A program made the translations under genes and the position numbers. Below are positions 13,775-23,666 of a DNA stretch of 64,000 bases, piece by piece. The stretch is taken from the IMG/VR virus record IMGVR_UViG_3300048591_000147, positions 248,001 through 312,000 of that record; one strand, 5' to 3'. The first letter of the stretch is position 1, and each line of letters starts with the position of its first letter. The notes beneath the pieces were generated by a model. The model saw only the letters and a list, made by a program, of their open reading frames with translations, had not been told where the DNA came from and ran no database searches.

Positions 13775-14335
13775 ATGTATTCTGAACTGGCTAATAGGAT
13801 CTTATGGTATGATGGTAAATCGTCAATGGATATTGACGATATAGTGCGTATGATATTGAATAATGAATCTATAGCCGATGTAAATTGTTTAGAATACGAC
13901 TACGAAGTTGAGATGTATAATAAATTGCCTAACTGTGATCTACAAGTCAAGTACGGTAATGAAGACATAAAGGCCGATTGGAACATACCAGACAAGTATA
14001 AAGAAATTAGTCTTCGTGAATATATCTTAGACAAGGCAGCGGCACACAACTTGAATAAAGATCTAGAATACATTAAGAAGAGTAACGAAAGGATAGATTA
14101 CGAATTACGCTTAATATCTGACATGAATTTGGTTGGACTATTTCAATGTATATTGTACTTAATCGATGTATTCATAGAACAAGGCATCGTGTGGGGAGTT
14201 GGGCGCGGTAGCTCATGCGCTAGTTATATATTGTATCTGATGGATCTCCATTGTGTAGATTCGATTCAATACGATATACCAGCGAACGAGTTCTATAAAG
14301 AAGTTATAAATAAGGTACACAATGAAGGCGAATAA
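13775..14335 (+). CDS. dnaE: DNA polymerase III alpha (DnaE)-like N-terminal palm fragment
   Basis: RIDYELRLI...GIVWGVGRGSSCASYILYLMDLHCVDSIQYDI matches the DnaE GRGS region. Confidence 0.85.
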   Translation: MYSELANRILWYDGKSSMDIDDIVRMILNNESIADVNCLEYDYEVEMYNKLPNCDLQVKYGNEDIKADWNIPDKYKEISLREYILDKAAAHNLNKDLEYIKKSNERIDYELRLISDMNLVGLFQCILYLIDVFIEQGIVWGVGRGSSCASYILYLMDLHCVDSIQYDIPANEFYKEVINKVHNEGE

Positions 14336-14340
14336 GAGAT

Positions 14341-14730
14341 ATGAGTAAGAAAATTGTAAAGTCATTACGTGGTGAAGATGTGGATTTTGATATGCTGCGT
14401 ATTAAGTCTGATTTAGGCGCGATACCTGAAACCGCAGACGTAAAGTTCAGAGAGAATATTATTCAATCTAGACGTAGAAGAAAGAATTCTTCTAAGCGAA
14501 AAGTCAAAGACATGCTGGCTCAGCAACAGATTAATCAAAAGGCTGTTATGATAGGGCTAGAAAAGCAGCGCAAACAGCGTGCAGACGAAGGCGTTAAACC
14601 TGTCGATGAGTTAGCGGTTCCAGTACTTGAGCTTGACACAAGTGTGGTAGATACCGAGAGTACAGAAACAAAAGAAAACTTCAATAGAAAAATAAGGAAA
14701 AATCAATCTAATGGACCTATCAGCGATTAA
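14341..14730 (+). CDS. Hypothetical protein
   Basis: 129-aa ORF with RBS, begins MSKKIVKSLRGEDVDFDML. Confidence 0.65.
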   Translation: MSKKIVKSLRGEDVDFDMLRIKSDLGAIPETADVKFRENIIQSRRRRKNSSKRKVKDMLAQQQINQKAVMIGLEKQRKQRADEGVKPVDELAVPVLELDTSVVDTESTETKENFNRKIRKNQSNGPISD

Positions 14731-15019
14731 GAATCATATATTATTTGAGTTTAGTGATCAAGTAATTAATAAAGCGTTTGCAAATGAAACAACTTGGGGC
14801 TTCACAGTTTTAGATAGAAATGAAGACGTTAAGTTGGCGAGATGGGCTAAGGTTTTGGCTTGTGGACCAGATGTCAATTCAGACATCAACGTAGGTGATT
14901 ATATTTACATAGAGCCATTAGCATGGACTACTAAAGTAGCAATCAACAAGAAGGATTACTGGATGACCAATGATACGAAGGTATTATTAGTATCCGATGA
15001 GTTACCCAAAGCACTTTAA
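14711..15019 (+). CDS. groES: GroES-like co-chaperonin
   Basis: About 100 aa with AKVLACGPDV...VGDYIY pattern. Confidence 0.7.
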   Translation: MDLSAIKNHILFEFSDQVINKAFANETTWGFTVLDRNEDVKLARWAKVLACGPDVNSDINVGDYIYIEPLAWTTKVAINKKDYWMTNDTKVLLVSDELPKAL

Positions 15020-15032
15020 CATTGTTTAACAT

Positions 15033-15074
15033 AATTAGCCCCCTAGATTGATAACTCTTTCTAGGGGGCTAATT
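15033..15074 (+). terminator. Long hairpin / terminator
   Basis: Perfect 15-bp inverted repeat AATTAGCCCCCTAGA/TCTAGGGGGCTAATT with a 12-nt loop. Confidence 0.75.
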
Positions 15075-15096
15075 TATTGTAAAGTCCGTTTATGTA

Positions 15097-15126
15097 TTGA
15101 CATATATGTCCCGGATATTGTAAAGT
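15097..15126 (+). promoter_or_regulatory. Sigma70-like promoter
   Basis: TTGACA-18-TAAAGT upstream of the clamp loader gene. Confidence 0.55.
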
Positions 15127-15154
15127 ACTCTCCACAATGTAGAGAGATAACTGA

Positions 15155-16105
15155 ATGAGTAAGAAAATATGGTCATTGTCATATAGACCACGCAAAATAG
15201 AAGATTATGTATTTTCATCACAACATACCAAAGATATAATCGAAGGCTTCATCAAAAACAAGAGCATCCCACACCTAATGTTTTATGGTAGTCCGGGGAC
15301 TGGTAAGACTACTTTGGCGTTCTTACTAAAAGAATATCTTGGGGTGGACGACTCAGACTTTCTTTTCCTGAATGCATCGAAAGATAATTCGGTCGATGTA
15401 ATAAGAACACGAGTAACAGACTTTATAACTACGTGCTGTATATCAGAGTCTGGATTCAAAATAGTGTTATTGGATGAAGGTGATGCACTGACTAAAGCCG
15501 CTCAAGACACATTGAGATCAATGATGGAGACTTATGAGGATAACGCTAGATTCATCCTCTGCTGTAATTATCCACACAAGATAACCGACCCACTAAAGTC
15601 AAGATTTCAGGGTATTGAATTCAACTCAATCGACAAAGAACAGATGTTCGTCAAGACGGTTGAAATCCTCCAACAGGCTGGTGTCACTATAGACGAATCT
15701 ACGTTAGACATTGTGGAAAAACAGCTAATAGCAGATTATCCAGATTTCCGAAAGTTGCTAAACAGCTTACAGAAGAACACCATTAACAATGTGTTGGTTG
15801 ACTGTGAACAGGCGGAAGACGCATCCATGATGGATAAGATAACGCTGTTTGACATCGTTACTGCGACAAGTGCCATAGACTGGTCAAACGTTAGAGATAA
15901 TGTCGTGACCAATATCAGTGACTCCGACTTCCTAGAATATTATCGATTCTTCTATGACCATCTACACGAGTCTGACAAGTTTAAGGACGTGAATAAATGG
16001 AAAGCCGGGATAGTCATCATAGCTGATCACCTATATAAGCACTCGCTTGTGGCTGATCAAGAAATAAATTTCACGGCAATGTTAGTACGAATTAACGGAG
16101 TATAA
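15155..16105 (+). CDS. 44: Clamp loader large subunit (gp44/RFC-like)
   Basis: YRPRKIEDY, GSPGTGKTT, LNAS, IVLLDEGD, SRF. Confidence 0.93.
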   Translation: MSKKIWSLSYRPRKIEDYVFSSQHTKDIIEGFIKNKSIPHLMFYGSPGTGKTTLAFLLKEYLGVDDSDFLFLNASKDNSVDVIRTRVTDFITTCCISESGFKIVLLDEGDALTKAAQDTLRSMMETYEDNARFILCCNYPHKITDPLKSRFQGIEFNSIDKEQMFVKTVEILQQAGVTIDESTLDIVEKQLIADYPDFRKLLNSLQKNTINNVLVDCEQAEDASMMDKITLFDIVTATSAIDWSNVRDNVVTNISDSDFLEYYRFFYDHLHESDKFKDVNKWKAGIVIIADHLYKHSLVADQEINFTAMLVRINGV

Positions 16106-16106
16106 G

Positions 16107-16430
16107 ATGTCAAATTTAGAAGATACATATAAAAAAGATATAGATCCAGCCAAGCTGAAAATCATACGCTCTCATATGGAGAAGGCAGATATACTGTCAT
16201 GGCGTCGTAAGAAAGAAAAAATGGAAAAGATGATTGAAGAGGAAATTCAACCAATAGAAGACGACATCTTAGCTTTGATACTTAAAAAGCAACCGTATAT
16301 GGATGAACTACTCGGCCTTCGTTCTACCATGGTAGAAACGTGTATCCATCCAGAAGATCTTTTAGTGGAATATGATGACGGTACACTGTTTTGCAACTTT
16401 TGTAATAAGAGACTGAAAATTCATGGCTAA
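16107..16430 (+). CDS. Hypothetical protein with C-terminal Cys/His motif
   Basis: CIHP...CNFC. Confidence 0.6.
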   Translation: MSNLEDTYKKDIDPAKLKIIRSHMEKADILSWRRKKEKMEKMIEEEIQPIEDDILALILKKQPYMDELLGLRSTMVETCIHPEDLLVEYDDGTLFCNFCNKRLKIHG

Positions 16431-16863
16431 AAAAATAGACATATTCGAAGTATTGAGAAAGATAGATGCTTGCGATATTGCTTATTTTCAGAATCTGGAT
16501 GAAGAGGAAATGAAATCTGTTCAACCATTAGTTATCATGCGATGGATGTCAGGGACGAAAGATTCAACACAGATTCAAAGGATCAATGCGCTTACTAACT
16601 CATTCGTGTTCTCTTTGCAGAAAGAGAAAATGCTGTTAATAAAGTTGTTGATGGCGTCTTCCACTTCTAAGAAAACGTACAAGTGGTATGGTAAGAAGTC
16701 TTCAGTCATTCTCCCTAAATCAAACGTGGAGATTGTCATGGACTATTACACATGTTCGAAGAAAGAGGCTGTAGAAGCTGTTAAACTGCTGAGTAAGGAT
16801 GATATACTAGCGCTAGCGATTGAGTTGGGTTACCAAAAAGAAGATATGACTGGTATAAAATGA
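16423..16863 (+). CDS. 62: Clamp loader small subunit (gp62-like)
   Basis: Helical protein with PLVIMRWMS and YYTCSKKEA...LLS pattern, near gp44. Confidence 0.6.
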   Translation: MAKKIDIFEVLRKIDACDIAYFQNLDEEEMKSVQPLVIMRWMSGTKDSTQIQRINALTNSFVFSLQKEKMLLIKLLMASSTSKKTYKWYGKKSSVILPKSNVEIVMDYYTCSKKEAVEAVKLLSKDDILALAIELGYQKEDMTGIK

Positions 16864-17531
16864 AGATAAAATGTGATTTTTGTGAGTACGTTTTTAAAAG
16901 CGAACAAGACGGTAAAGATCATTCTTGTAAATATTCCGAACGCTTCCAGAAAGTAAGGACGCTTACCGGGCTATTGGCCTTCGATTTGTATAAATCGTGG
17001 AGGCAAAAGAAGGGGTTCTTCACTGGTGACGAATCGACCTTTATCATGTCAAAATATTTTACGGTATTCTTTAATCTTGGTGAATTCATGAACAAGAAGT
17101 CCATACCACTGCGCCAGCATTACTTAGACTTCTGTATAAAAGCTACCTTACTGCCCAACAATTGGTATTCAGAAACAGTCTACATGGAATACCTAATGAC
17201 ATTCGACAATGAGGTAGACCCAGAATTACAGTACAAGATTAGTAAGAAGACGATAAACTCATTGGCTGATATGATTGATTGTCAGCCGAATCAGGTTTTA
17301 CACTACCTGAATTTTGATGAAATTGCTAAATTGGTGTATACGAAGAATCTGTCACCATGGTTTTTGCTCTTCAGTAAGGTATTCAATCATATCTATAAAA
17401 ATAAATTAACAAACGAAGAACGTATCCTGTGTGATAGATTGATAAATCGTGATGTATGGGTAGAGAAGTTAAGAGCCAACCGGGAAACTTCACAAACTAT
17501 AATCAATTTGATAAAAGAGGATTCGTTTTAA
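16860..17531 (+). CDS. Hypothetical protein with N-terminal zinc finger
   Basis: CDFC...HSC at the N-terminus. Confidence 0.65.
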   Translation: MKIKCDFCEYVFKSEQDGKDHSCKYSERFQKVRTLTGLLAFDLYKSWRQKKGFFTGDESTFIMSKYFTVFFNLGEFMNKKSIPLRQHYLDFCIKATLLPNNWYSETVYMEYLMTFDNEVDPELQYKISKKTINSLADMIDCQPNQVLHYLNFDEIAKLVYTKNLSPWFLLFSKVFNHIYKNKLTNEERILCDRLINRDVWVEKLRANRETSQTIINLIKEDSF

Positions 17532-17543
17532 TCGTAACTGGAC

Positions 17544-17567
17544 ATAAATACATCTGATAAATAAATA
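17544..17567 (+). promoter_or_regulatory. Stacked T4-like late promoters
   Basis: ATAAATA at 17544, 17557 and 17561 immediately upstream of a structural gene block. Confidence 0.65.
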
Positions 17568-17584
17568 AAATTCAGGGATTTTTA

Positions 17585-19411
17585 ATGGCCAGTTGCAATG
17601 ACAATACATATGTGGTTAGATTTACGGACCCAATCAGAGGCACTATATCAGTTGGTAAGAATGCACTAATCACTGATGAAGCTGACGTTGCGTTTCCGGG
17701 GAAATCTAGATTGGAGTATGGTGAAATTTTCAATGAGAATGTTTTACACATGCTCGAAAATTTCGCATGTTCAGAAGATGAAGCCAACCCCGGTAATCCA
17801 GATTTAGATGTAGCGTATGGTGCATTATTACAACTGCCAGTGTATGGCCAGTTCTGGTTAAATACAACACAAGGTAGATTATATTTTTGGGATGATACTA
17901 ATTGGGTGCCATTTGGATTGTCAGATGACATCTATGGTAACGCTGGTGTTATCTTTAATGGTGAATTCATCCCAGTTCCAGTAAGCCCGGTAACAGGATT
18001 GCCTTTTGACACAGCAGAATGTATGTTCGTTGTTTCACCGTTTTACACACCAGAAGAAACAGATTATATAGAATGCACTGTAAATCGTCTAACTGGACAA
18101 GTGTCATCGCATTATAGACTGGCAAGCGGTGGTGGATTAGTAGATGCTTGTGCAAACTATTTAGTGTTAGCTATCAGAGGTAACGTAAATCTAGGTACGG
18201 ATGCTTGTAGTGTATTAGCAGTTCCAACTGCCACACCGACACCGACACCGACCATAACACCATCTGTGACCACTACAGTAACTCCTACGATCACCCCTAC
18301 GTTGACACCAACAATCACAACAACTGTGACTCCTACAGTTACTCCGACTATTACAATATCTCCATCACCGGGGTCATCGCCAACACCAACACCAACTATT
18401 ACTCCAACTGTGACGCCAACTATATCTGTGACGCCTACTCTTGGATTAACTCCAACTGTGACGCCAACTATATCTGTGACGCCAACTATATCTGTGACGC
18501 CAACTATATCTGTGACGCCAACTATATCGGCGCCAGCAGCGTCACCACCAGCATTAGGACCATTTGGCGCCTCTGCCGGTGGCGGTCTAATATCACCAAG
18601 TTGTGGCGTATATTATCCTTCTACTAGCACACCAATCGGATCTGGTAGTTTGGTTTATAATAGTATTTCGCATATATTAACTGGTAGAGGTTCAGGTGCT
18701 ATAGCAGGTGGAGTAGGTTGCCCTACAACATCTACATATAGTGGTGGTATAACATTTACTGCGTCTGGCGGCACCCGTGTCGGTCCAACTGGGCCGTTCT
18801 ACTCTTGGACATTAACAGGGGTGGCTAGTGGCTCAGCGGCGATTAATGTTACAAAACTTGTTTACGGTGTAAACAATAATAAATGTGGTATCAATGTCAG
18901 TTCGTCTGGACCAGACGGATCATTCGGATCATGGCAAGGTACATTAACATTGGAAGCTAGATCAGCGTTGCATTTGCCGCCTACGCATACATTAGATATA
19001 GATATAGATATAGTTATTAATCACACTGGGGCTACGGCCCTGATAGTGTCTCCATCCATTACAAACACCGATTCTGCTTGTGGGCCAGCACCTGTTTCAG
19101 GTTGGAGACACAGTTTTAGTGGTTCCTTGGGCGGTACAATAACAGGCGGTATTTATCGTGAGATAATAGCTCAATCATTAACAACCTCTCCGGGCTACAC
19201 AATCAATTCTGGGTGGACTGCATCACTAATTGGTAATAATATTGTGAGCCCCGGTTTTACTGGTTATGGACCAACTAATAATTCAGGCGCGTGTGGTGAC
19301 ACCGGAACGATTACGATCTATGTAACGTTCTCGGTGACCGCTACTGATGGATTAGGCAACACAGCAACCAATACACGTCAAGTTCCTATAATATTGCAGA
19401 ACACCCCATAA
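17585..19411 (+). CDS. Tail/baseplate-associated protein with Pro/Thr-rich linker (paralog 1)
   Basis: YGEIFNENVLHMLENFA...GQFWLNT N-terminal domain, ~100-aa TP-rich tract, G/S/T-rich C-terminal domain. Confidence 0.65.
   Translation: MASCNDNTYVVRFTDPIRGTISVGKNALITDEADVAFPGKSRLEYGEIFNENVLHMLENFACSEDEANPGNPDLDVAYGALLQLPVYGQFWLNTTQGRLYFWDDTNWVPFGLSDDIYGNAGVIFNGEFIPVPVSPVTGLPFDTAECMFVVSPFYTPEETDYIECTVNRLTGQVSSHYRLASGGGLVDACANYLVLAIRGNVNLGTDACSVLAVPTATPTPTPTITPSVTTTVTPTITPTLTPTITTTVTPTVTPTITISPSPGSSPTPTPTITPTVTPTISVTPTLGLTPTVTPTISVTPTISVTPTISVTPTISAPAASPPALGPFGASAGGGLISPSCGVYYPSTSTPIGSGSLVYNSISHILTGRGSGAIAGGVGCPTTSTYSGGITFTASGGTRVGPTGPFYSWTLTGVASGSAAINVTKLVYGVNNNKCGINVSSSGPDGSFGSWQGTLTLEARSALHLPPTHTLDIDIDIVINHTGATALIVSPSITNTDSACGPAPVSGWRHSFSGSLGGTITGGIYREIIAQSLTTSPGYTINSGWTASLIGNNIVSPGFTGYGPTNNSGACGDTGTITIYVTFSVTATDGLGNTATNTRQVPIILQNTP
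18410..18529 (+). repeat. 18-bp coding tandem repeat (VTPTIS)
   Basis: GTGACGCCAACTATATCT at 18410, then four tandem copies at 18458-18529 (last ends in G). Confidence 0.95.
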
Positions 19412-19431
19412 TTGAGAATGAAGAGAATTAA

Positions 19432-20190
19432 ATGGCATATAATGTAAAATATACAAATAATAACAAACCAGATATAGTGGTGCAAAGCGAGTCTGAATTA
19501 TCAGAATCGCTAAGTGTTAATTTGTTCGGTAGAGCATTTCTAGAATATGGGGAACAATTAAACGAGAGTTTATTAAAACTGTTGGAGAATTGCGCATGCC
19601 CAGAGTTCACTGATAACCCCGGAAGACCCGATTTGGGCAAGGGTCCACGTTTAATAAATCCGGTTGAAGGGCAATTATGGTACAATACAACGCAACAATT
19701 ATTCTTTTATTGGAATGCTTTTGAATGGGTGCCGCTATCAATTCGCTCCGATGTTGCGGCGAATTGGGGTCAAATAGCTCATGGTGAAGTATTACCACGC
19801 CCTGTTAATCTTACTAATAATTATGAGTTTCCATATTCTCAATGTATCTGGATGGTTTCGCCACAAGAAATCCCAACCAGATTCAATTATTATGTGTGCA
19901 CCACAGATAGTGAAGCGGTAGTAACTATGTTATATCGCACAGTTGGTGATGCAGTTCCAACACCGGGAACTGCAAACTATCTAATTATCGGTATTAAGAA
20001 TAACGGTAATACTGGTATTATAGATTGTACGTATGATGTTATTACACCATTGACACCGACCCCAACAGTTACTCCAACCCCTACTTCAACACCAGCGCCA
20101 ACTCCGGGTGAAGGATTCTTCATAATGCTAGAGACTGATGTAGATATCTTATTATTAGAAACTGATGGCGGACTGTTGAAGGAAATATAA
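19432..20190 (+). CDS. Tail/baseplate-associated protein (paralog 2)
   Basis: YGEQLNESLLKLLENCA...GQLWYNT, short TP tract, LLLETDGGLLKE tail. Confidence 0.65.
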   Translation: MAYNVKYTNNNKPDIVVQSESELSESLSVNLFGRAFLEYGEQLNESLLKLLENCACPEFTDNPGRPDLGKGPRLINPVEGQLWYNTTQQLFFYWNAFEWVPLSIRSDVAANWGQIAHGEVLPRPVNLTNNYEFPYSQCIWMVSPQEIPTRFNYYVCTTDSEAVVTMLYRTVGDAVPTPGTANYLIIGIKNNGNTGIIDCTYDVITPLTPTPTVTPTPTSTPAPTPGEGFFIMLETDVDILLLETDGGLLKEI

Positions 20191-20198
20191 GGATAATT

Positions 20199-20369
20199 AT
20201 GTATATAATGGTTAGGGTGACAGACAATATGATCATAGGAAGTGCAAACAATCCTATAAATAAAAAGACTGCCATGGATAGGGGCTACTTGGTATATGAA
20301 CTTAGTAGTTCGGAATATTCCGAAGATTTAATTGGCCAAATATTAGAGAGCTTTGAAGAAAAACAATGA
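20199..20369 (+). CDS. Small hypothetical protein (56 aa, not in ORF track)
   Basis: MYIMVRVTDNMIIGS...FEEKQ; AAGGA RBS; ATGA overlap with the next gene. Confidence 0.6.
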   Translation: MYIMVRVTDNMIIGSANNPINKKTAMDRGYLVYELSSSEYSEDLIGQILESFEEKQ

Positions 20370-21148
20370 CAGACTATAATGTGAAATTCACCAATATTGA
20401 TGTACCATCTATATTGCTTGAACCTAAAGACATCAATAAAGATTATGGCGTAACGCTGTTTGGTAGAACTAGGTTACAATATGGTAGGGACATGAATGAA
20501 AATATCCTACACTTGCTTGAGCATTTTGCTTGTAGGGAGGACGCAGACAATCCCGGAAATCCAGATCTAGCATTAGCACTAGATGATGATACGACAGTGA
20601 ACGATTTTCTAGGCAACCCAGTAGAAGGCCAGATATGGTTGAATTCTACTACTGATTCACCATTTTTTTGGGATGGTAGTAGATGGGTTCCATTTGGCAT
20701 GGCCGACGATTACGCCGCTAATTCCGGTAGAATCGCACATGGTGAGCAGATACCGTTACCAGTGAGCGTAACCGGATACGGATTTTCACCACAAGAATGC
20801 GTCTGGATTGTTAGTCCTTCTAATCTGCCAGCAGTTGTAGACTATTTTATTTGTAGAACAGATTCTGAAGCAATAGTAAATATGCAATATAGTCTGACTA
20901 CTAGCGGAGCGCTTATTGATGGTTGCGCGAATTATTTAATTTTTGGATTAAAGCATAATACTAATAATGGCGAATTGCCACCTGATATAACTCCAACTCC
21001 AACACCTTCAGTCACTCCAAATCCTGTTGTTACGCCTTCGGTTACACCCGGCGCAGAATTTATTATATCTGAAGACGAAGATTATTACTTCATTGTGCAG
21101 GAATATACTGCATATGATAGTCAGAACGAATACATAGTACAAGAATAA
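20366..21148 (+). CDS. Tail/baseplate-associated protein (paralog 3)
   Basis: YGRDMNENILHLLEHFA...GQIWLNS, short TP tract. Confidence 0.65.
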   Translation: MTDYNVKFTNIDVPSILLEPKDINKDYGVTLFGRTRLQYGRDMNENILHLLEHFACREDADNPGNPDLALALDDDTTVNDFLGNPVEGQIWLNSTTDSPFFWDGSRWVPFGMADDYAANSGRIAHGEQIPLPVSVTGYGFSPQECVWIVSPSNLPAVVDYFICRTDSEAIVNMQYSLTTSGALIDGCANYLIFGLKHNTNNGELPPDITPTPTPSVTPNPVVTPSVTPGAEFIISEDEDYYFIVQEYTAYDSQNEYIVQE

Positions 21149-21170
21149 ATAGACATTAAAGGAATATAAA

Positions 21171-21713
21171 ATGCCAAATTTAAGAATCAGTGAATTTACC
21201 TTGAATACCACCTTAAACGGTAGTGAGATAGTTTTAGGGGTGCAATCTGGAAATACAGTCAAAATCAGTATGGATGCAATAAAAACATTCGTCCTTGATG
21301 TAGATGCTTCCAGTATTGGTGATGTTGTAATAGCCGATGTTTTGTTAACAGATGTTAACTCGACAGTTTTGAACATAGCTGTTAATAGTTCTACGATGTA
21401 TCAAATTGATGCGATGCTGTTTATAGAAAACCCAAATACTGACGGGTTAATATTTGATATAGGTGTATATGATTTAACGACAGATATATTTAATATTGGG
21501 TATGTGGGTGGTGCTAGTTTTGGTGTCATGGAGATAGCTGTTCAGGAGGTCATTTCGGATGCTACTGGAATCCCGTTCATCAGAATGAGTGGGATAATAT
21601 CAGTGACTGGAACTGGCGGTACGATGACAGTGACTGCGAGAGTAGATAATAACGTTATAGGCACTACAAGCATTCTCAAGGGTAGCTATATCGTCGCTAC
21701 AAAAATTCAATAA
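21171..21713 (+). CDS. Tail fibre/spike-associated protein
   Basis: N-terminal RISEF...LNGSEIVLGVQSGNTVKIS motif typical of phage fibre attachment regions. Confidence 0.5.
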   Translation: MPNLRISEFTLNTTLNGSEIVLGVQSGNTVKISMDAIKTFVLDVDASSIGDVVIADVLLTDVNSTVLNIAVNSSTMYQIDAMLFIENPNTDGLIFDIGVYDLTTDIFNIGYVGGASFGVMEIAVQEVISDATGIPFIRMSGIISVTGTGGTMTVTARVDNNVIGTTSILKGSYIVATKIQ

Positions 21714-21721
21714 TTTATAAC

Positions 21722-22381
21722 ATGCATATAACAAATCTAGTCGTCAAAACAACCCCATTTAATGAAAATAAAAAATGGGGTGACGCTTTATCTCTGAAAA
21801 TAAGATTATTACAAAATTCTGATTGGGTCTTATTACCAGACTCTTCTGTTTACAATCTGGAAGAATGGGTATTGTGGCGTCAGAAAGTAAAGCAAGTATC
21901 AAGAGAATCATCAGAGTCTCCAGAACAGGCTAAGCAATTACTTACCAAGTTAATGGAGTCTACACCACAGGTTATCAAGCTGGATACTGGTAGTATAGAA
22001 TCATTTAGATTTGAGCTGATAGCTAAAGTAAAATATTACTACAATCGTAAAATAGAGACGCAGTGTATCGATAGTGATCTAATTCCATTATTAGTGAATG
22101 AGCGGTATGAAGAGGCGATAGCATATAAAACAAAATCAAAAATACAGGATTTTGTTTTGATTCTTAATGAAGTGACATCAACTGGAAAAACCGTCAAAGA
22201 AGTGATATCATCCTTTAAAGACGATAAGTTACGCATGAAGTTAATAATAGCGACTAACTACAATGCAATGGTGCGGATGATCGCCTCTATTGAAGGGGCT
22301 AATTTCGAGGAACTTACGTCCATTTATGATAGAGTACGCACATGGATATTGATATCGACATTAAACCAGTTAGTAATCTAA
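21722..22381 (+). CDS. Tail fibre assembly chaperone-like protein
   Basis: SDWVLLPDS...WVLWRQKVK motif. Confidence 0.6.
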   Translation: MHITNLVVKTTPFNENKKWGDALSLKIRLLQNSDWVLLPDSSVYNLEEWVLWRQKVKQVSRESSESPEQAKQLLTKLMESTPQVIKLDTGSIESFRFELIAKVKYYYNRKIETQCIDSDLIPLLVNERYEEAIAYKTKSKIQDFVLILNEVTSTGKTVKEVISSFKDDKLRMKLIIATNYNAMVRMIASIEGANFEELTSIYDRVRTWILISTLNQLVI

Positions 22382-22911
22382 CTGACAGGCTATACGGCAC
22401 CAGAGCTTCAACAATAGAAAACAAAGAACTAAAGCCCCACTTAGTAGGATGGTATTTTCAAACCATTCCGGTAGATCATATCACCGGGCTGGCAGCAATA
22501 CCATACAATAAAGCCGAAGAATTAGACTTCAAAAAAATAGACATATTGAACTTGAACTTGTTGAAGTTGTTCGATTCTAGGGCAGAGTTGAAAGCCGTGC
22601 TGGACATAAAACCTAACTGGAAAATGTTAGAACATGAATCCGTAGTTACTAGATTATTTCATATCAAAAATCATTTTGACATCGTGATACGATGTAAGCC
22701 GAAGTCGGTAGAAGACATTGCAGATATATTAGCATTGATTCGTCCGGGCAAAAAAGAACTTTTAGATAAATATTTAAAAGACAAATCGGCTGTAAGACCG
22801 TTGTTGTATGATAAACACCTAGATAGCGATCTACGTAAATCGCATGCGGTGGCATATGCAATGAACATTGTAGTCCAGATGAATCTTATTCAACTAGGAA
22901 TAGATATATGA
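22342..22911 (+). CDS. dnaE: DNA polymerase III alpha (DnaE)-like catalytic fragment
   Basis: MDIDID, HLVGWY, KKIDILNL, KPKSVEDIADILALIRPG, LRKSHAVAY. Confidence 0.85.
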   Translation: MDIDIDIKPVSNLTDRLYGTRASTIENKELKPHLVGWYFQTIPVDHITGLAAIPYNKAEELDFKKIDILNLNLLKLFDSRAELKAVLDIKPNWKMLEHESVVTRLFHIKNHFDIVIRCKPKSVEDIADILALIRPGKKELLDKYLKDKSAVRPLLYDKHLDSDLRKSHAVAYAMNIVVQMNLIQLGIDI

Positions 22912-23222
22912 AATTTTTAAATTGGTTAATGGAGAAACAAGAGAATGATAAAGCATTGTCGTTGTATCAGTCCCTTGCACTCTTGATAATAAACTCTAGT
23001 CCTAGTACGGAGTTAGCCACAGAACTTATCAATAAAAACTTGAAACTCATTAATGCCGTGAACTTCCTGAAAGGGACTAGATTGATTTCATATAATCCTA
23101 GTGGATATAAGTGCACCCCGCATGGAATTCAGCAGTTAAAATATAATGGGTTTGTCAACGACAATGGATCATTAACCGATAAGGGTAAAAAATTAATCAA
23201 CACCAGAAGCGAATACTTATAA
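22908..23222 (+). CDS. Hypothetical protein
   Basis: 104-aa ORF, ATGA overlap. Confidence 0.6.
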   Translation: MKFLNWLMEKQENDKALSLYQSLALLIINSSPSTELATELINKNLKLINAVNFLKGTRLISYNPSGYKCTPHGIQQLKYNGFVNDNGSLTDKGKKLINTRSEYL

Positions 23223-23666
23223 TATTTGCTCGGAATTCTCTTTAATTCTACCAGAGTAGATAATTTCTATAGAGTCTGGAATATCTTTCTTTCTCTTTCT
23301 CTTTATCTTAATAGGGTTTCCCATATTGAACACAAATAATGGCCCTAATATTCTTGACACGTAGTCAACCGGGAAACATTTTATTATAGTGCTATACTCT
23401 GTTACATTGTTTCTTGATAAGAATACAGAGAATGGGATCAGGTGTGAGTAATCTTCATACCATCTCTTACCGTAAGACACTATCTCATTTTCATTCAGAC
23501 TAGCCGGTTGACATTCATCTAATACATACGCATGAATAATATCATTAATAATATTATCTACGATTGTTATCTGCGGCTTGTCCATATATTTAATCAATGA
23601 TATGAAACGGTATCCATTGTAATTTTCTGGATATTCTTCTGGAACTAATTTTGAATATTTTTTCAT
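23217..23666 (-). CDS. Hypothetical protein
   Basis: 149-aa ORF, ATGA overlap with its upstream minus-strand gene. Confidence 0.7.
   Translation of the reverse strand: MKKYSKLVPEEYPENYNGYRFISLIKYMDKPQITIVDNIINDIIHAYVLDECQPASLNENEIVSYGKRWYEDYSHLIPFSVFLSRNNVTEYSTIIKCFPVDYVSRILGPLFVFNMGNPIKIKRKRKKDIPDSIEIIYSGRIKENSEQIL

What the first reader, a model, noticed from the sequence alone, without database searches (positions are those of the whole stretch)
13775..22911. Miniature DnaE palm split into two genes 8 kb apart
Gene A (13775-14335) ends at the equivalent of E. coli DnaE LLFERFL. Gene B (22342-22911) starts at the next motif (PDFDVD = MDIDID), so the two are complementary. B keeps all three catalytic Asp (DxD and KIDIL). 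The usual long thumb region before HAGG is reduced to about 25 aa, and PHP, HhH, OB and clamp-binding domains are absent. The phage otherwise has a T4-type replisome. Inference: a heterodimeric Pol-beta-fold nucleotidyltransferase with a non-replicative role (primer extension, repair, nucleotide or signal synthesis). Small DnaE-like genes recur in jumbo phage annotations, so this is not unique, but I know of no demonstrated function.
Basis: partly seen in the sequence, partly recalled or inferred. Interest (0 to 1): 0.75.

Follow-up and report, generated by a model that had tools for sequence, protein, structure and literature searches.

The report
Split minimal Pol III polymerase, jumbo phage
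Two small genes 8 kb apart in this 315-kb phage genome encode the two halves of a stripped-down bacterial-type (DnaE) DNA polymerase core; the arrangement is real and conserved, but it was already described for this group of jumbo phages in 2021 and its function has not been tested at the bench.

Summary
Gene A (13775-14335, 186 aa) covers E. coli DnaE 276-398. Gene B (22342-22911, 189 aa) covers 401-783 and starts exactly at the DxD motif. The thumb and about half of the fingers are deleted. No PHP, HhH or OB domain is found anywhere in the complete 315-kb genome.

A and B are single-copy and co-occur in about 100 isolate phages and in 11 of 12 large metagenomic phage contigs. They lie 5 to 182 kb apart. 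The catalytic Asp residues, the GS loop, RPG and the steric-gate His are nearly invariant in 105 divergent homologues.

A heterodimer is supported in two ways. The complex model scores ipSAE 0.93 against 0.00 for the best control. Two rare natural A+B fusions exist, one of them translationally coupled to a primase-type Rep gene.

This is not new. Iyer et al. 2021 (PMC7824862) described this split minimal Pol III alpha in group 2.2 jumbo phages, and PHROGs holds both halves as families. I found no experimental study.

The evidence favours an active dNTP-using, templated accessory DNA polymerase linked to the T4-type replication genes. It does not favour a signalling or non-templated enzyme. The exact role remains inferred.

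The parts
13775..14335 (+). Gene A: N-terminal subunit of the split minimal Pol III alpha (186 aa). It is the NTP-binding half of the palm.
   Evidence: ORF. PF07733 E 1.3e-12. phrog_11127 1.9e-38. hhalign to E. coli DnaE 323-395 with 95.5% probability. AF2 model pLDDT 91.
13775..13972 (+). A residues 1-66: a conserved extra N-terminal domain (L10, D13, G14 invariant) with no aligned counterpart in DnaE. It contacts B in the complex model.
   Evidence: Alignment A1. VIA-align covers only residues 67-181. The interface includes residues 1-16. It is absent from the short fusion P0370. The Atlas gave no lead.
13973..14317 (+). A residues 67-181: the first palm segment, equivalent to E. coli DnaE 276-398.
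   Evidence: VIA-align Z 12.8 to 4jom and 5lew. Sixteen C-family polymerases rank first, then Z falls to 3.8.
14192..14212 (+). W140-S146 (WGVGRGS): the invariant GS loop of the Pol-beta-like nucleotidyltransferase fold. It aligns with E. coli GRGSG at 361-365.
   Evidence: Invariant in A1. The pattern G-x-GRG-[SA] is present in 120 of 120 homologues. Alignments. E. coli position.
22342..22911 (+). Gene B: C-terminal subunit (189 aa). It holds the Mg-binding palm strands and a reduced finger domain, equivalent to E. coli DnaE 401-783.
   Evidence: ORF. PF17657 1.1e-6. phrog_11778 1.9e-58. VIA-align Z 10.5 with 179 residues aligned. AF2 model pLDDT 93.
22345..22359 (+). D2-D6 (DIDID): the catalytic DxD, equivalent to E. 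coli D401/D403 (plus D405). It sits at the very N-terminus of the protein.
   Evidence: Invariant in A2. D2 and D4 are kept in 104 of 105 divergent representatives. The profile aligns to Taq D463. VIA-align maps residue 1 to 401.
22438..22449 (+). H33-G36 (HLVG): equivalent of E. coli HAGG 511-514. Only 27 aa separate it from D6, against 106 aa in E. coli, so the thumb is deleted.
   Evidence: H33 and G36 are invariant. Spacing computed.
22534..22542 (+). K65-I66-D67: the third catalytic Asp, equivalent to E. coli K553/D555.
   Evidence: hhalign and hmmsearch against Taq LKMD. K65 and D67 are kept in 105 of 105 representatives.
22741..22746 (+). R134-P135: the finger 'RPG' motif, equivalent to E. 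coli R639-P640.
   Evidence: Alignments. R is kept in 102 of 105 and P in 104 of 105. E. coli position.
22837..22845 (+). K166-S167-H168: equivalent of E. coli K758-S759-H760. H760 is the presumptive steric gate against ribonucleotides.
   Evidence: Alignment (B 157-175 to E. coli 749-767). H is kept in 101 of 105. Role of H760 from PMC8485763.

Best explanation
Genes A and B encode the two subunits of one enzyme, a minimal C-family (DnaE-type) DNA polymerase core. A supplies the first palm helices and the GS loop that holds the nucleotide triphosphate. B supplies the beta-strands with the three metal-binding Asp residues and a trimmed finger domain that reads the incoming dNTP. The two chains assemble without covalent joining into a composite active site, so neither should be active alone. 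The heterodimer most likely carries out short, distributive, template-directed DNA synthesis with dNTPs. It would act as an accessory to the phage's family B replicase, for example in primer extension, gap filling or recombination-associated synthesis. Shown here: homology, complementarity, conservation, co-occurrence, and the absence of other DnaE domains. Predicted: heterodimer formation. Inferred: dNTP use, template dependence and the replisome-linked role.
For: Complementarity:
- A 67-181 maps to DnaE 276-398 and B 1-189 to DnaE 401-783.

Composite active site:
- The predicted interface joins A's GS loop (138-149) to B's DxD strand (1-8) and the KxD region (61-71).
- ipSAE was 0.92-0.93 in three runs, and the best of three controls was 0.00. 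That mark was reached by 58 of 80 solved complexes and 2 of 110 mismatched pairs.

Natural fusions:
- P0312 (375 aa) carries phrog_11127 at 8-180 and phrog_11778 at 190-374. A full-length DnaE profile (phrog_405) aligns straight across its junction.
- P0370 is a shorter fusion.

Purifying selection on the active site in 105 representatives at 50% identity or less:
- D2 and D4: 104 of 105
- K65 and D67: 105 of 105
- R134: 102; P135: 104
- H168 (steric gate): 101
- Y172: 91, plus 8 with F
- The pattern G-x-GRG-[SA] is present in 120 of 120 A homologues.

Co-occurrence:
- A is in 99 and B in 96 phage records.
- Both occur in 11 of 12 contigs of 229 kb or more. The one exception is cut 477 bp beyond B.
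- Both are in Atu_ph07, 182 kb apart, and in a 141-kb phage.

Replication context:
- In the window, XacN1 and GAP32, gene A lies within a replication and recombination gene block shortly upstream of the clamp loader.
- B lies near primase and helicase genes in GAP32, Atu_ph07 and Slicko01.
- The fused P0370 overlaps by 4 nt a gene for a PF03090 primase-type Rep.

Fold: Foldseek and VIA-align return only C-family polymerases for both models.
Against: - No biochemical or genetic data exist for any member.
- The thumb, HhH and OB domains and the known clamp-binding regions of DnaE are missing, so how the enzyme would hold primer-template DNA is unexplained.
- The heterodimer carries a net negative charge: A has pI 4.5 and B pI 7.8.
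- The high complex score could partly reflect the model's memory of single-chain DnaE structures (caveat stated).
- The Rep-coupled fusion is a single case.
- Synteny with replication genes may only reflect a conserved core-genome order.
Confidence: 0.6

Rival explanations
1. A+B form a heterodimeric Pol-beta-fold nucleotidyltransferase that does not copy a template. Candidate activities are terminal transferase or tailing, synthesis of a nucleotide signal, or nucleotidylation of a protein or nucleic-acid end.
For: - All DNA-holding parts of DnaE (thumb, HhH, OB) are absent.
- The Pol-beta superfamily contains many non-templated enzymes (general knowledge).
- The heterodimer is small and acidic.
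Against: - The finger elements that in DnaE contact the incoming dNTP are retained and nearly invariant. These are RPG, K-S-H with the steric-gate His, and Y172 (PMC8485763).
- Structure searches return only C-family polymerases. No CD-NTase, MNT or poly(A)-polymerase-like enzyme reaches significance.
- Both genes are single-copy core genes placed among replication genes. They are not sporadic like defence or counter-defence genes.
Confidence: 0.17
2. The pair is a specialised polymerase for unusual substrates rather than a general accessory polymerase. Examples are copying or filling in hypermodified or damaged phage DNA, or extending RNA primers before hand-off to the family B enzyme.
For: - B is close to primase and helicase genes in three lineages.
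- The fused form is coupled to a primase-type Rep.
- No proofreading partner is found: there is no PHP and no DnaQ-type exonuclease in the genome.
- Nucleotide-metabolism genes lie nearby in relatives.
Against: - Nothing in the sequence separates this reading from the general accessory-polymerase reading.
- The primase linkage is absent from this window, where no primase or helicase gene was found downstream of B.
- No evidence on DNA modification was gathered.
Confidence: 0.15
3. The two proteins are catalytically idle. They would be structural or regulatory replisome parts, or decaying fragments of a captured dnaE gene.
For: Extreme reduction of the fold, and loss of most DnaE domains.
Against: - Every catalytic residue is nearly invariant across more than 100 clusters at 50% identity or less.
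- Lengths are uniform, and B starts at M-DIDID in 117 of the 120 closest homologues.
- There are 1208 A-family and 894 B-family clusters in metagenomes.
- Both fold confidently, with pLDDT 91-93.
Confidence: 0.03
4. The halves are joined after translation, by a split intein as in cyanobacterial DnaE, or at the DNA or RNA level, to give a single chain.
For: Cyanobacterial dnaE is a known split gene joined by protein trans-splicing (general knowledge; the 'split DnaE' hits all concern it).
Against: - A has only about 12 residues beyond the DnaE-homologous end, and most homologues have 0-3.
- B begins directly at the DxD motif. There is therefore no room for intein halves.
- The intervening 8 kb holds conserved replication genes, including the clamp loader.
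- The spacing ranges from 5 to 182 kb, and the gene order is reversed in GAP32.
Confidence: 0.01

Closest known systems
Split minimal DNA polymerase III alpha of group 2.2 jumbo phages (Iyer, Anantharaman, Krishnan, Burroughs, Aravind 2021, Viruses 13:63, PMC7824862; PHROGs phrog_11127 and phrog_11778)
   Same: - Two stand-alone proteins encoded by distant genes: an N-terminal NTP-binding half and a C-terminal Mg- and template-binding half.
- No other Pol III domains in the genome.
- Accompanied by a family B polymerase and an RFC-like clamp loader.
The window's genes are full-length members of both PHROG families.
   Different: Nothing essential. This copy comes from an uncultured 315-kb phage and is only 38% (A) and 52% (B) identical to the nearest isolate, XacN1 or Xoo-sp13. 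A here carries a 12-residue C-terminal tail that most homologues lack.
Bacterial replicative C-family polymerases (DnaE / Pol III alpha, PolC)
   Same: - Pol-beta-like palm with the GS loop and three catalytic Asp residues.
- Finger motifs RPG and K-S-H, including the steric-gate His.
- Collinear structural alignment to E. coli 276-398 and 401-783.
   Different: - Split into two chains.
- No PHP domain.
- Thumb deleted (27 aa against 106 aa).
- About 87 aa of fingers missing between RPG and the steric gate.
- Everything after residue ~783 is absent, including the beta-clamp-binding, HhH, OB and tau-binding parts.
- The total is about 375 aa against 1160 aa.
Cyanobacterial split dnaE joined by a split intein
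   Same: A DnaE encoded by two separate genes.
   Different: - The cyanobacterial halves carry intein fragments and are ligated into a full-length DnaE (own knowledge).
- Here there are no intein sequences, the split falls at a different place (between E. coli residues ~398 and 401), and the product is a minimal core.
Family X polymerases such as Pol beta (a functional analogy only)
   Same: - A small (~40 kDa), Pol-beta-fold, probably distributive polymerase.
- No proofreading domain.
- It sits alongside a large replicative polymerase.
   Different: - The palm and fingers are of the C-family type rather than the X family.
- No lyase or BRCT domains.
- Two subunits.
- Gap-filling activity is only conjectured here.
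Split family B polymerase (gp43A/gp43B) of some T4-like Aeromonas phages (own knowledge, not checked here)
   Same: A phage DNA polymerase whose catalytic core is encoded by two genes and reassembled without covalent joining.
   Different: A different polymerase family. In those phages the two genes are near each other. Here the family B polymerase is a single 880-aa ORF.

Membership tests
Split minimal Pol III alpha of group 2.2 jumbo phages (Iyer et al. 2021) | N-terminal subunit of ~170-190 aa carrying the NTP-binding GS loop of the Pol III palm | tested here: met
   phrog_11127 matched over its full length, 1.9e-38. WGxGRGS is invariant. Maps to DnaE 276-398.
Split minimal Pol III alpha of group 2.2 jumbo phages (Iyer et al. 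2021) | C-terminal subunit of ~190 aa with the Mg-binding Asp residues and the template- and dNTP-binding finger remnant | tested here: met
   phrog_11778 1.9e-58. DxD, KxD, RPG and KSH are conserved. Maps to DnaE 401-783.
Split minimal Pol III alpha of group 2.2 jumbo phages (Iyer et al. 2021) | The two halves are encoded by distantly located genes | tested here: met
   There are 8.0 kb and 14 ORFs between them. The spacing is 5-182 kb in relatives.
Split minimal Pol III alpha of group 2.2 jumbo phages (Iyer et al. 2021) | The genome has a family B polymerase and an RFC-type clamp loader, and no other Pol III domains | tested here: met
   PF00136 matches one 880-aa ORF. Clamp loader phrog_168 2.8e-72. 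PHP, HHH_6, OB and DnaQ give no match.
Canonical C-family replicative polymerase (DnaE/PolC) | Pol-beta-like palm with the GS loop and three catalytic acidic residues | tested here: met
Canonical C-family replicative polymerase (DnaE/PolC) | N-terminal PHP domain | tested here: not met
   PF02811 gives no match in the complete genome at E<=10, while it matched in all 14 control genomes.
Canonical C-family replicative polymerase (DnaE/PolC) | Thumb domain between the DxD strand and HAGG | tested here: not met
   27 aa here against 106 aa in E. coli.
Canonical C-family replicative polymerase (DnaE/PolC) | C-terminal clamp-binding/HhH and OB domains | tested here: not met
   B ends at the equivalent of E. 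coli residue ~783. PF14579 and PF01336 are absent from the genome.
Canonical C-family replicative polymerase (DnaE/PolC) | Template-directed DNA polymerase activity | not testable with these tools
   Needs primer-extension assays. Only the conservation of the catalytic and steric-gate residues is shown.
Intein-split DnaE (cyanobacterial type) | Intein N- and C-fragments at the split ends | tested here: not met
   A has at most 12 residues beyond the DnaE homology, and B starts at M-DIDID. There are no intein Pfam hits.
Non-templated Pol-beta-fold nucleotidyltransferases (CD-NTase, MNT, poly(A) polymerase-like) | Closest structural or sequence relatives fall in those families, and there is no polymerase finger domain | tested here: not met
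   Only C-family polymerases are significant, and MNT or ANT entries appear only at E>0.7. A finger-domain Pfam hit is present.

The most novel reading that the evidence does not exclude
The A+B heterodimer is a genuine second DNA polymerase of a family B replisome and has a dedicated step, such as extending primase products before hand-off or filling gaps. It would use partners other than those of bacterial Pol III, possibly including the conserved unknown neighbour phrog_11637. That would make it the smallest known working C-family polymerase and a model for the minimal or ancestral catalytic core of bacterial replicases.
Probability: 0.35. Interest if true: 0.7.

Novelty: already known. Interest (0 to 1): 0.4.

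Why it matters
If the pair is an active polymerase, it defines the smallest catalytic unit of the bacterial replicase family: about 375 residues in two chains, with no thumb, PHP or clamp-binding parts. It would also show that a large clade of jumbo phages runs a two-polymerase replisome mixing archaeo-eukaryotic-type (family B) and bacterial-type (family C) enzymes. That idea is already in the literature as a prediction.

This analysis adds several testable details:
- near-invariance of the steric-gate His
- rare natural fusions, one coupled to a primase-type Rep
- strict co-occurrence of A and B across distances from 5 to 182 kb
- a conserved neighbour of unknown function

The biology remains open because nobody has assayed the protein.

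Tried and rejected
- Missing DnaE domains elsewhere in the genome: PHP, HHH_6, OB, a second palm or finger copy and DnaQ exonuclease were all negative.
- Intein or other joining of the halves: rejected from the termini.
- Conserved operon partners:
  - The 219-aa ORF upstream of B is shared with XacN1 (E 6e-13) but not with GAP32.
  - The 104-aa ORF downstream of B is not shared.
  - The 107-aa ORF upstream of A is shared with XacN1 only.
  - This is lineage-level synteny, not a family-wide partnership.
- More fused relatives: searching with P0370 found only stand-alone B proteins.
- Expression data: the PA5oct omics paper says nothing on these genes.
- Sequencing runs: the only runs holding this region are wastewater cDNA libraries kept as contigs, with a share of 0.09-0.20. 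I did not run read laying, because contigs without direction from such libraries cannot separate transcripts from carried-over phage DNA.
- A's N-terminal domain (residues 1-66) and the neighbour phrog_11637: Pfam and the Atlas gave no usable lead.
- Sequence-only profile search of B against PDB was weak (E 0.2). The residue equivalences therefore rest on collinearity together with the structural alignment.

Full report
**1. The observation**

Both ORFs are present exactly as reported: A at 13775-14335 (+, 186 aa) and B at 22342-22911 (+, 189 aa).

Gene A:
- It matches Pfam PF07733, the Pol III alpha NTPase/palm domain (E 1.3e-12, A 98-174).
- It matches the small phage family phrog_11127 over its full length (1.9e-38).

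Gene B:
- It matches PF17657, the Pol III alpha finger domain (1.1e-6).
- It matches phrog_11778 (1.9e-58).

These matches are far beyond chance.

**2. Residue equivalences**

I fetched E. coli dnaE and located its motifs:

| Motif | E. coli position |
|---|---|
| GRGSG | 361-365 |
| LLFERFL | 386-392 |
| DFDVDF | 401-406 |
| HAGG | 511-514 |
| KFDFLGL | 553-559 |
| FRPGP | 638-642 |
| NKSHS | 757-761 |

- phmmer and hhalign put A 102-177 on DnaE 320-395, with 95.5% probability.
- The AlphaFold models are confident, with pLDDT 91 for A and 93 for B.
- VIA-align places A 67-181 on DnaE 276-398 (Z 12.8) and B 1-189 on DnaE 401-783 (Z 10.5, 179 residues aligned).
- Only C-family polymerases rank at the top, followed by a sharp drop in Z. 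Foldseek agrees.

- B D2/D4 correspond to D401/D403, and K65/D67 to K553/D555.
- R134-P135 aligns with the RPG motif.
- K166-S167-H168 aligns with K758-S759-H760.
- According to PMC8485763, D401, D403 and D555 are the catalytic residues, and H760 is the invariant presumptive steric gate against ribonucleotides.

**3. What is missing**

| Segment | E. coli | B |
|---|---|---|
| DxD strand to HAGG (thumb) | 106 aa | 27 aa |
| RPG to steric gate | 121 aa | 34 aa |

- B stops at the equivalent of residue ~783.
- The window lies in a complete 314,956-bp virus record with terminal repeats.
- In six-frame scans of that record, palm and finger each match once. PHP, HHH_6, the OB domain and DnaQ-type exonuclease do not match at all, although the same searches ring in the control genomes.
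- The missing domains are therefore not encoded elsewhere.
- The genome has one family B polymerase ORF of 880 aa. It also has a gp44/62-like clamp loader, a gp32-like SSB, UvsX, helicases and a DnaB-like helicase. It is a T4-type replisome.

**4. One enzyme from two genes**

*Conservation.*
- In the A family, WGxGRGS is invariant (120 of 120).
- In 105 B-family representatives of clusters at 50% identity or less:

| Residue | Conserved |
|---|---|
| D2, D4 | 104 of 105 |
| K65, D67 | 105 of 105 |
| R134 | 102 |
| P135 | 104 |
| H168 | 101 |
| Y172 | 91, plus 8 with F |

- B begins M-DIDID in 117 of the 120 closest homologues.

*Co-occurrence.*
- tblastn finds A in 99 and B in 96 phage records with the same host-genus breakdown. 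These include Rak2-like phages, XacN1, RsoM2USA and Xoo-sp13.
- In 12 IMG/VR contigs of 229 kb or more that were found through B, B is single-copy in all 12 and A is single-copy in 11.
- In the one exception, B lies 477 bp from the end of an incomplete linear contig, on the side where A would be expected.
- The A profile also finds A in Atu_ph07, 182 kb from B, and in a 141-kb Alishewanella phage, 11 kb from B.
- The two genes are always separate. The spacing runs from 5 to 182 kb, and the order is reversed in GAP32.

*Complex prediction.*
- A+B scores ipSAE 0.92-0.93 in three runs, and the best of three controls is 0.00. The tool's mark was reached by 58 of 80 solved complexes and 2 of 110 mismatched pairs.
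- The interface joins A's GS loop and C-terminal helices to B's DxD strand and KxD region.
- The tool warns that such a pass may come from memory of similar solved structures, here single-chain DnaE.

*Natural fusions.*
- Among 435 B-family representatives, two are longer than a stand-alone B.
- P0312 (375 aa) is a full A+B fusion with a junction like that of DnaE. A full-length DnaE-type profile aligns across that junction.
- P0370 (336 aa) is a shorter fusion that lacks A's N-terminal domain.
- These are Rosetta-stone evidence that A and B work as one unit.
- Fusions are rare. The nearest relatives of P0370 are stand-alone B proteins.

**5. What it probably does**

The retained residues are those that in DnaE hold the metals, the triphosphate and the sugar of an incoming dNTP, including the steric-gate His. 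They are under strong purifying selection. This argues for dNTP-dependent, DNA-polymerase-type chemistry and against synthesis of ribonucleotide signals.

Context agrees:
- In the window, gene A sits in the order SSB, UvsX, helicase, phrog_11279, a small ORF, A, a small ORF, a GroES-like gene, then clamp-loader large and small subunits.
- XacN1 has the same order, and in GAP32 A keeps its place upstream of the GroES-like gene and clamp loader but is preceded by topoisomerase genes, although their A proteins are only 35-38% identical to the window's.
- B lies 1.5-2.5 kb upstream of primase and gp41-like helicase genes in GAP32, Atu_ph07 and the Alishewanella phage. This is not so in the window.
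- The fused P0370 overlaps by 4 nt the end of a gene for a PF03090 'Replicase' (primase-type Rep) protein. That is a single case.
- A scan of one genome from each of 185,579 prokaryotic species found only two B loci, both on MAG contigs. The family is therefore essentially phage-only. It behaves as a core gene pair, not as a sporadic defence-related gene.

My best reading is an active two-subunit accessory DNA polymerase doing short, distributive synthesis beside the family B replicase. The specific step, whether primer extension, gap filling or recombination-linked synthesis, is inference.

Points against this reading:
- There is no thumb or other DNA-holding domain.
- The heterodimer is acidic (A pI 4.5, B pI 7.8).
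- There is no experiment on any member.

**6. Comparison with what is known**

The finding is not new. Iyer et al. 2021 (PMC7824862, sections 3.4.1 and 3.5, Fig. 3b) describe the following in group 2.2 jumbo phages:
- They state that these phages lack other Pol III domains and carry a family B polymerase.
- They suggest cooperation in strand synthesis or repair.

PHROGs and RefSeq already label both halves 'DNA polymerase'. Five literature searches found no later experimental work.

The window's genes meet every defining feature of that described family. They fail the membership test for canonical DnaE/PolC on PHP, thumb, the C-terminal domains and the single-chain criterion. They also fail the test for intein-split DnaE.

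**7. What this analysis adds**

- Tool-based residue mapping, with B residue 1 falling on D401.
- Quantified conservation, including the steric gate.
- Explicit co-occurrence and spacing data.
- A high-scoring complex prediction with controls.
- Two natural fusions, one coupled to a Rep gene.
- A conserved neighbour of unknown function, phrog_11637.
- A's unassigned N-terminal domain (residues 1-66).

**8. Verdict**

- Novelty: already known as a prediction, and functionally untested.
- Interest is moderate (0.4). It is a good candidate for biochemistry, but it would not surprise a specialist who knows the 2021 survey.

Noticed in passing
window 23217-23666 (- strand): A 149-aa ORF of unknown function (phrog_11637, E 2e-17) with a basic KIKRKRKK tail lies convergent to gene B. 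The same family sits directly downstream of B on the opposite strand in GAP32 (2.9e-56) and Atu_ph07 (3e-50), and in XacN1 one ORF further on (3.1e-41). This holds even though the A-B distance varies from 5 to 182 kb. It may be a partner of the mini polymerase, or only part of a conserved core block.
   Followed up: partly
window 13775-13972 (A residues 1-66): Gene A carries a conserved N-terminal domain (L10, D13, G14 invariant; beta-rich) that does not align to any part of DnaE in the structure searches. It touches B in the complex model and is missing from the short natural fusion P0370. Its role is unknown; it might replace the PHP or thumb contacts.
   Followed up: partly
L089:1516-4181 (JGI metagenome contig, 8 kb): A single-chain fused mini-DnaE (P0370, 336 aa) overlaps by 4 nt the stop of a 552-aa gene with PF03090 'Replicase' and an HTH. 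This looks like a compact primase-type Rep plus minimal polymerase module on a small element. It is a single occurrence.
   Followed up: partly
window 17585-19411, 19432-20190, 20366-21148 (+): Three paralogous ORFs (608, 252 and 260 aa) share a conserved N-terminal ~200-aa domain followed by long Pro/Thr-rich (PTPT) linkers. They lie between genes A and B and raise the local GC to 0.43. They look like fibre or decoration proteins.
   Followed up: no
window 14711-15019 (+): A GroES/Cpn10-like co-chaperonin ORF (phrog_3188 3.8e-4; PF00166 below its cut-off) lies between gene A and the clamp loader. An ORF in the same position in GAP32 is annotated 'head morphogenesis'.
   Followed up: no
G004:C1:66799-67335 and G005:C1:156778-157314 (IMG/VR contigs): In two related contigs the open frame that contains the A match is 356 aa long, about twice the usual length. 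This could mean an N- or C-terminal extension or fusion of A in that lineage.
   Followed up: no
PHROG hits of gene A: phrog_13169 (463 positions) and phrog_7513 (461 positions) match A near their C-terminal ends. This suggests that other phages encode longer N-terminal DnaE pieces, possibly PHP plus the first palm segment, that end near the same split point. The split site may be recurrent.
   Followed up: no
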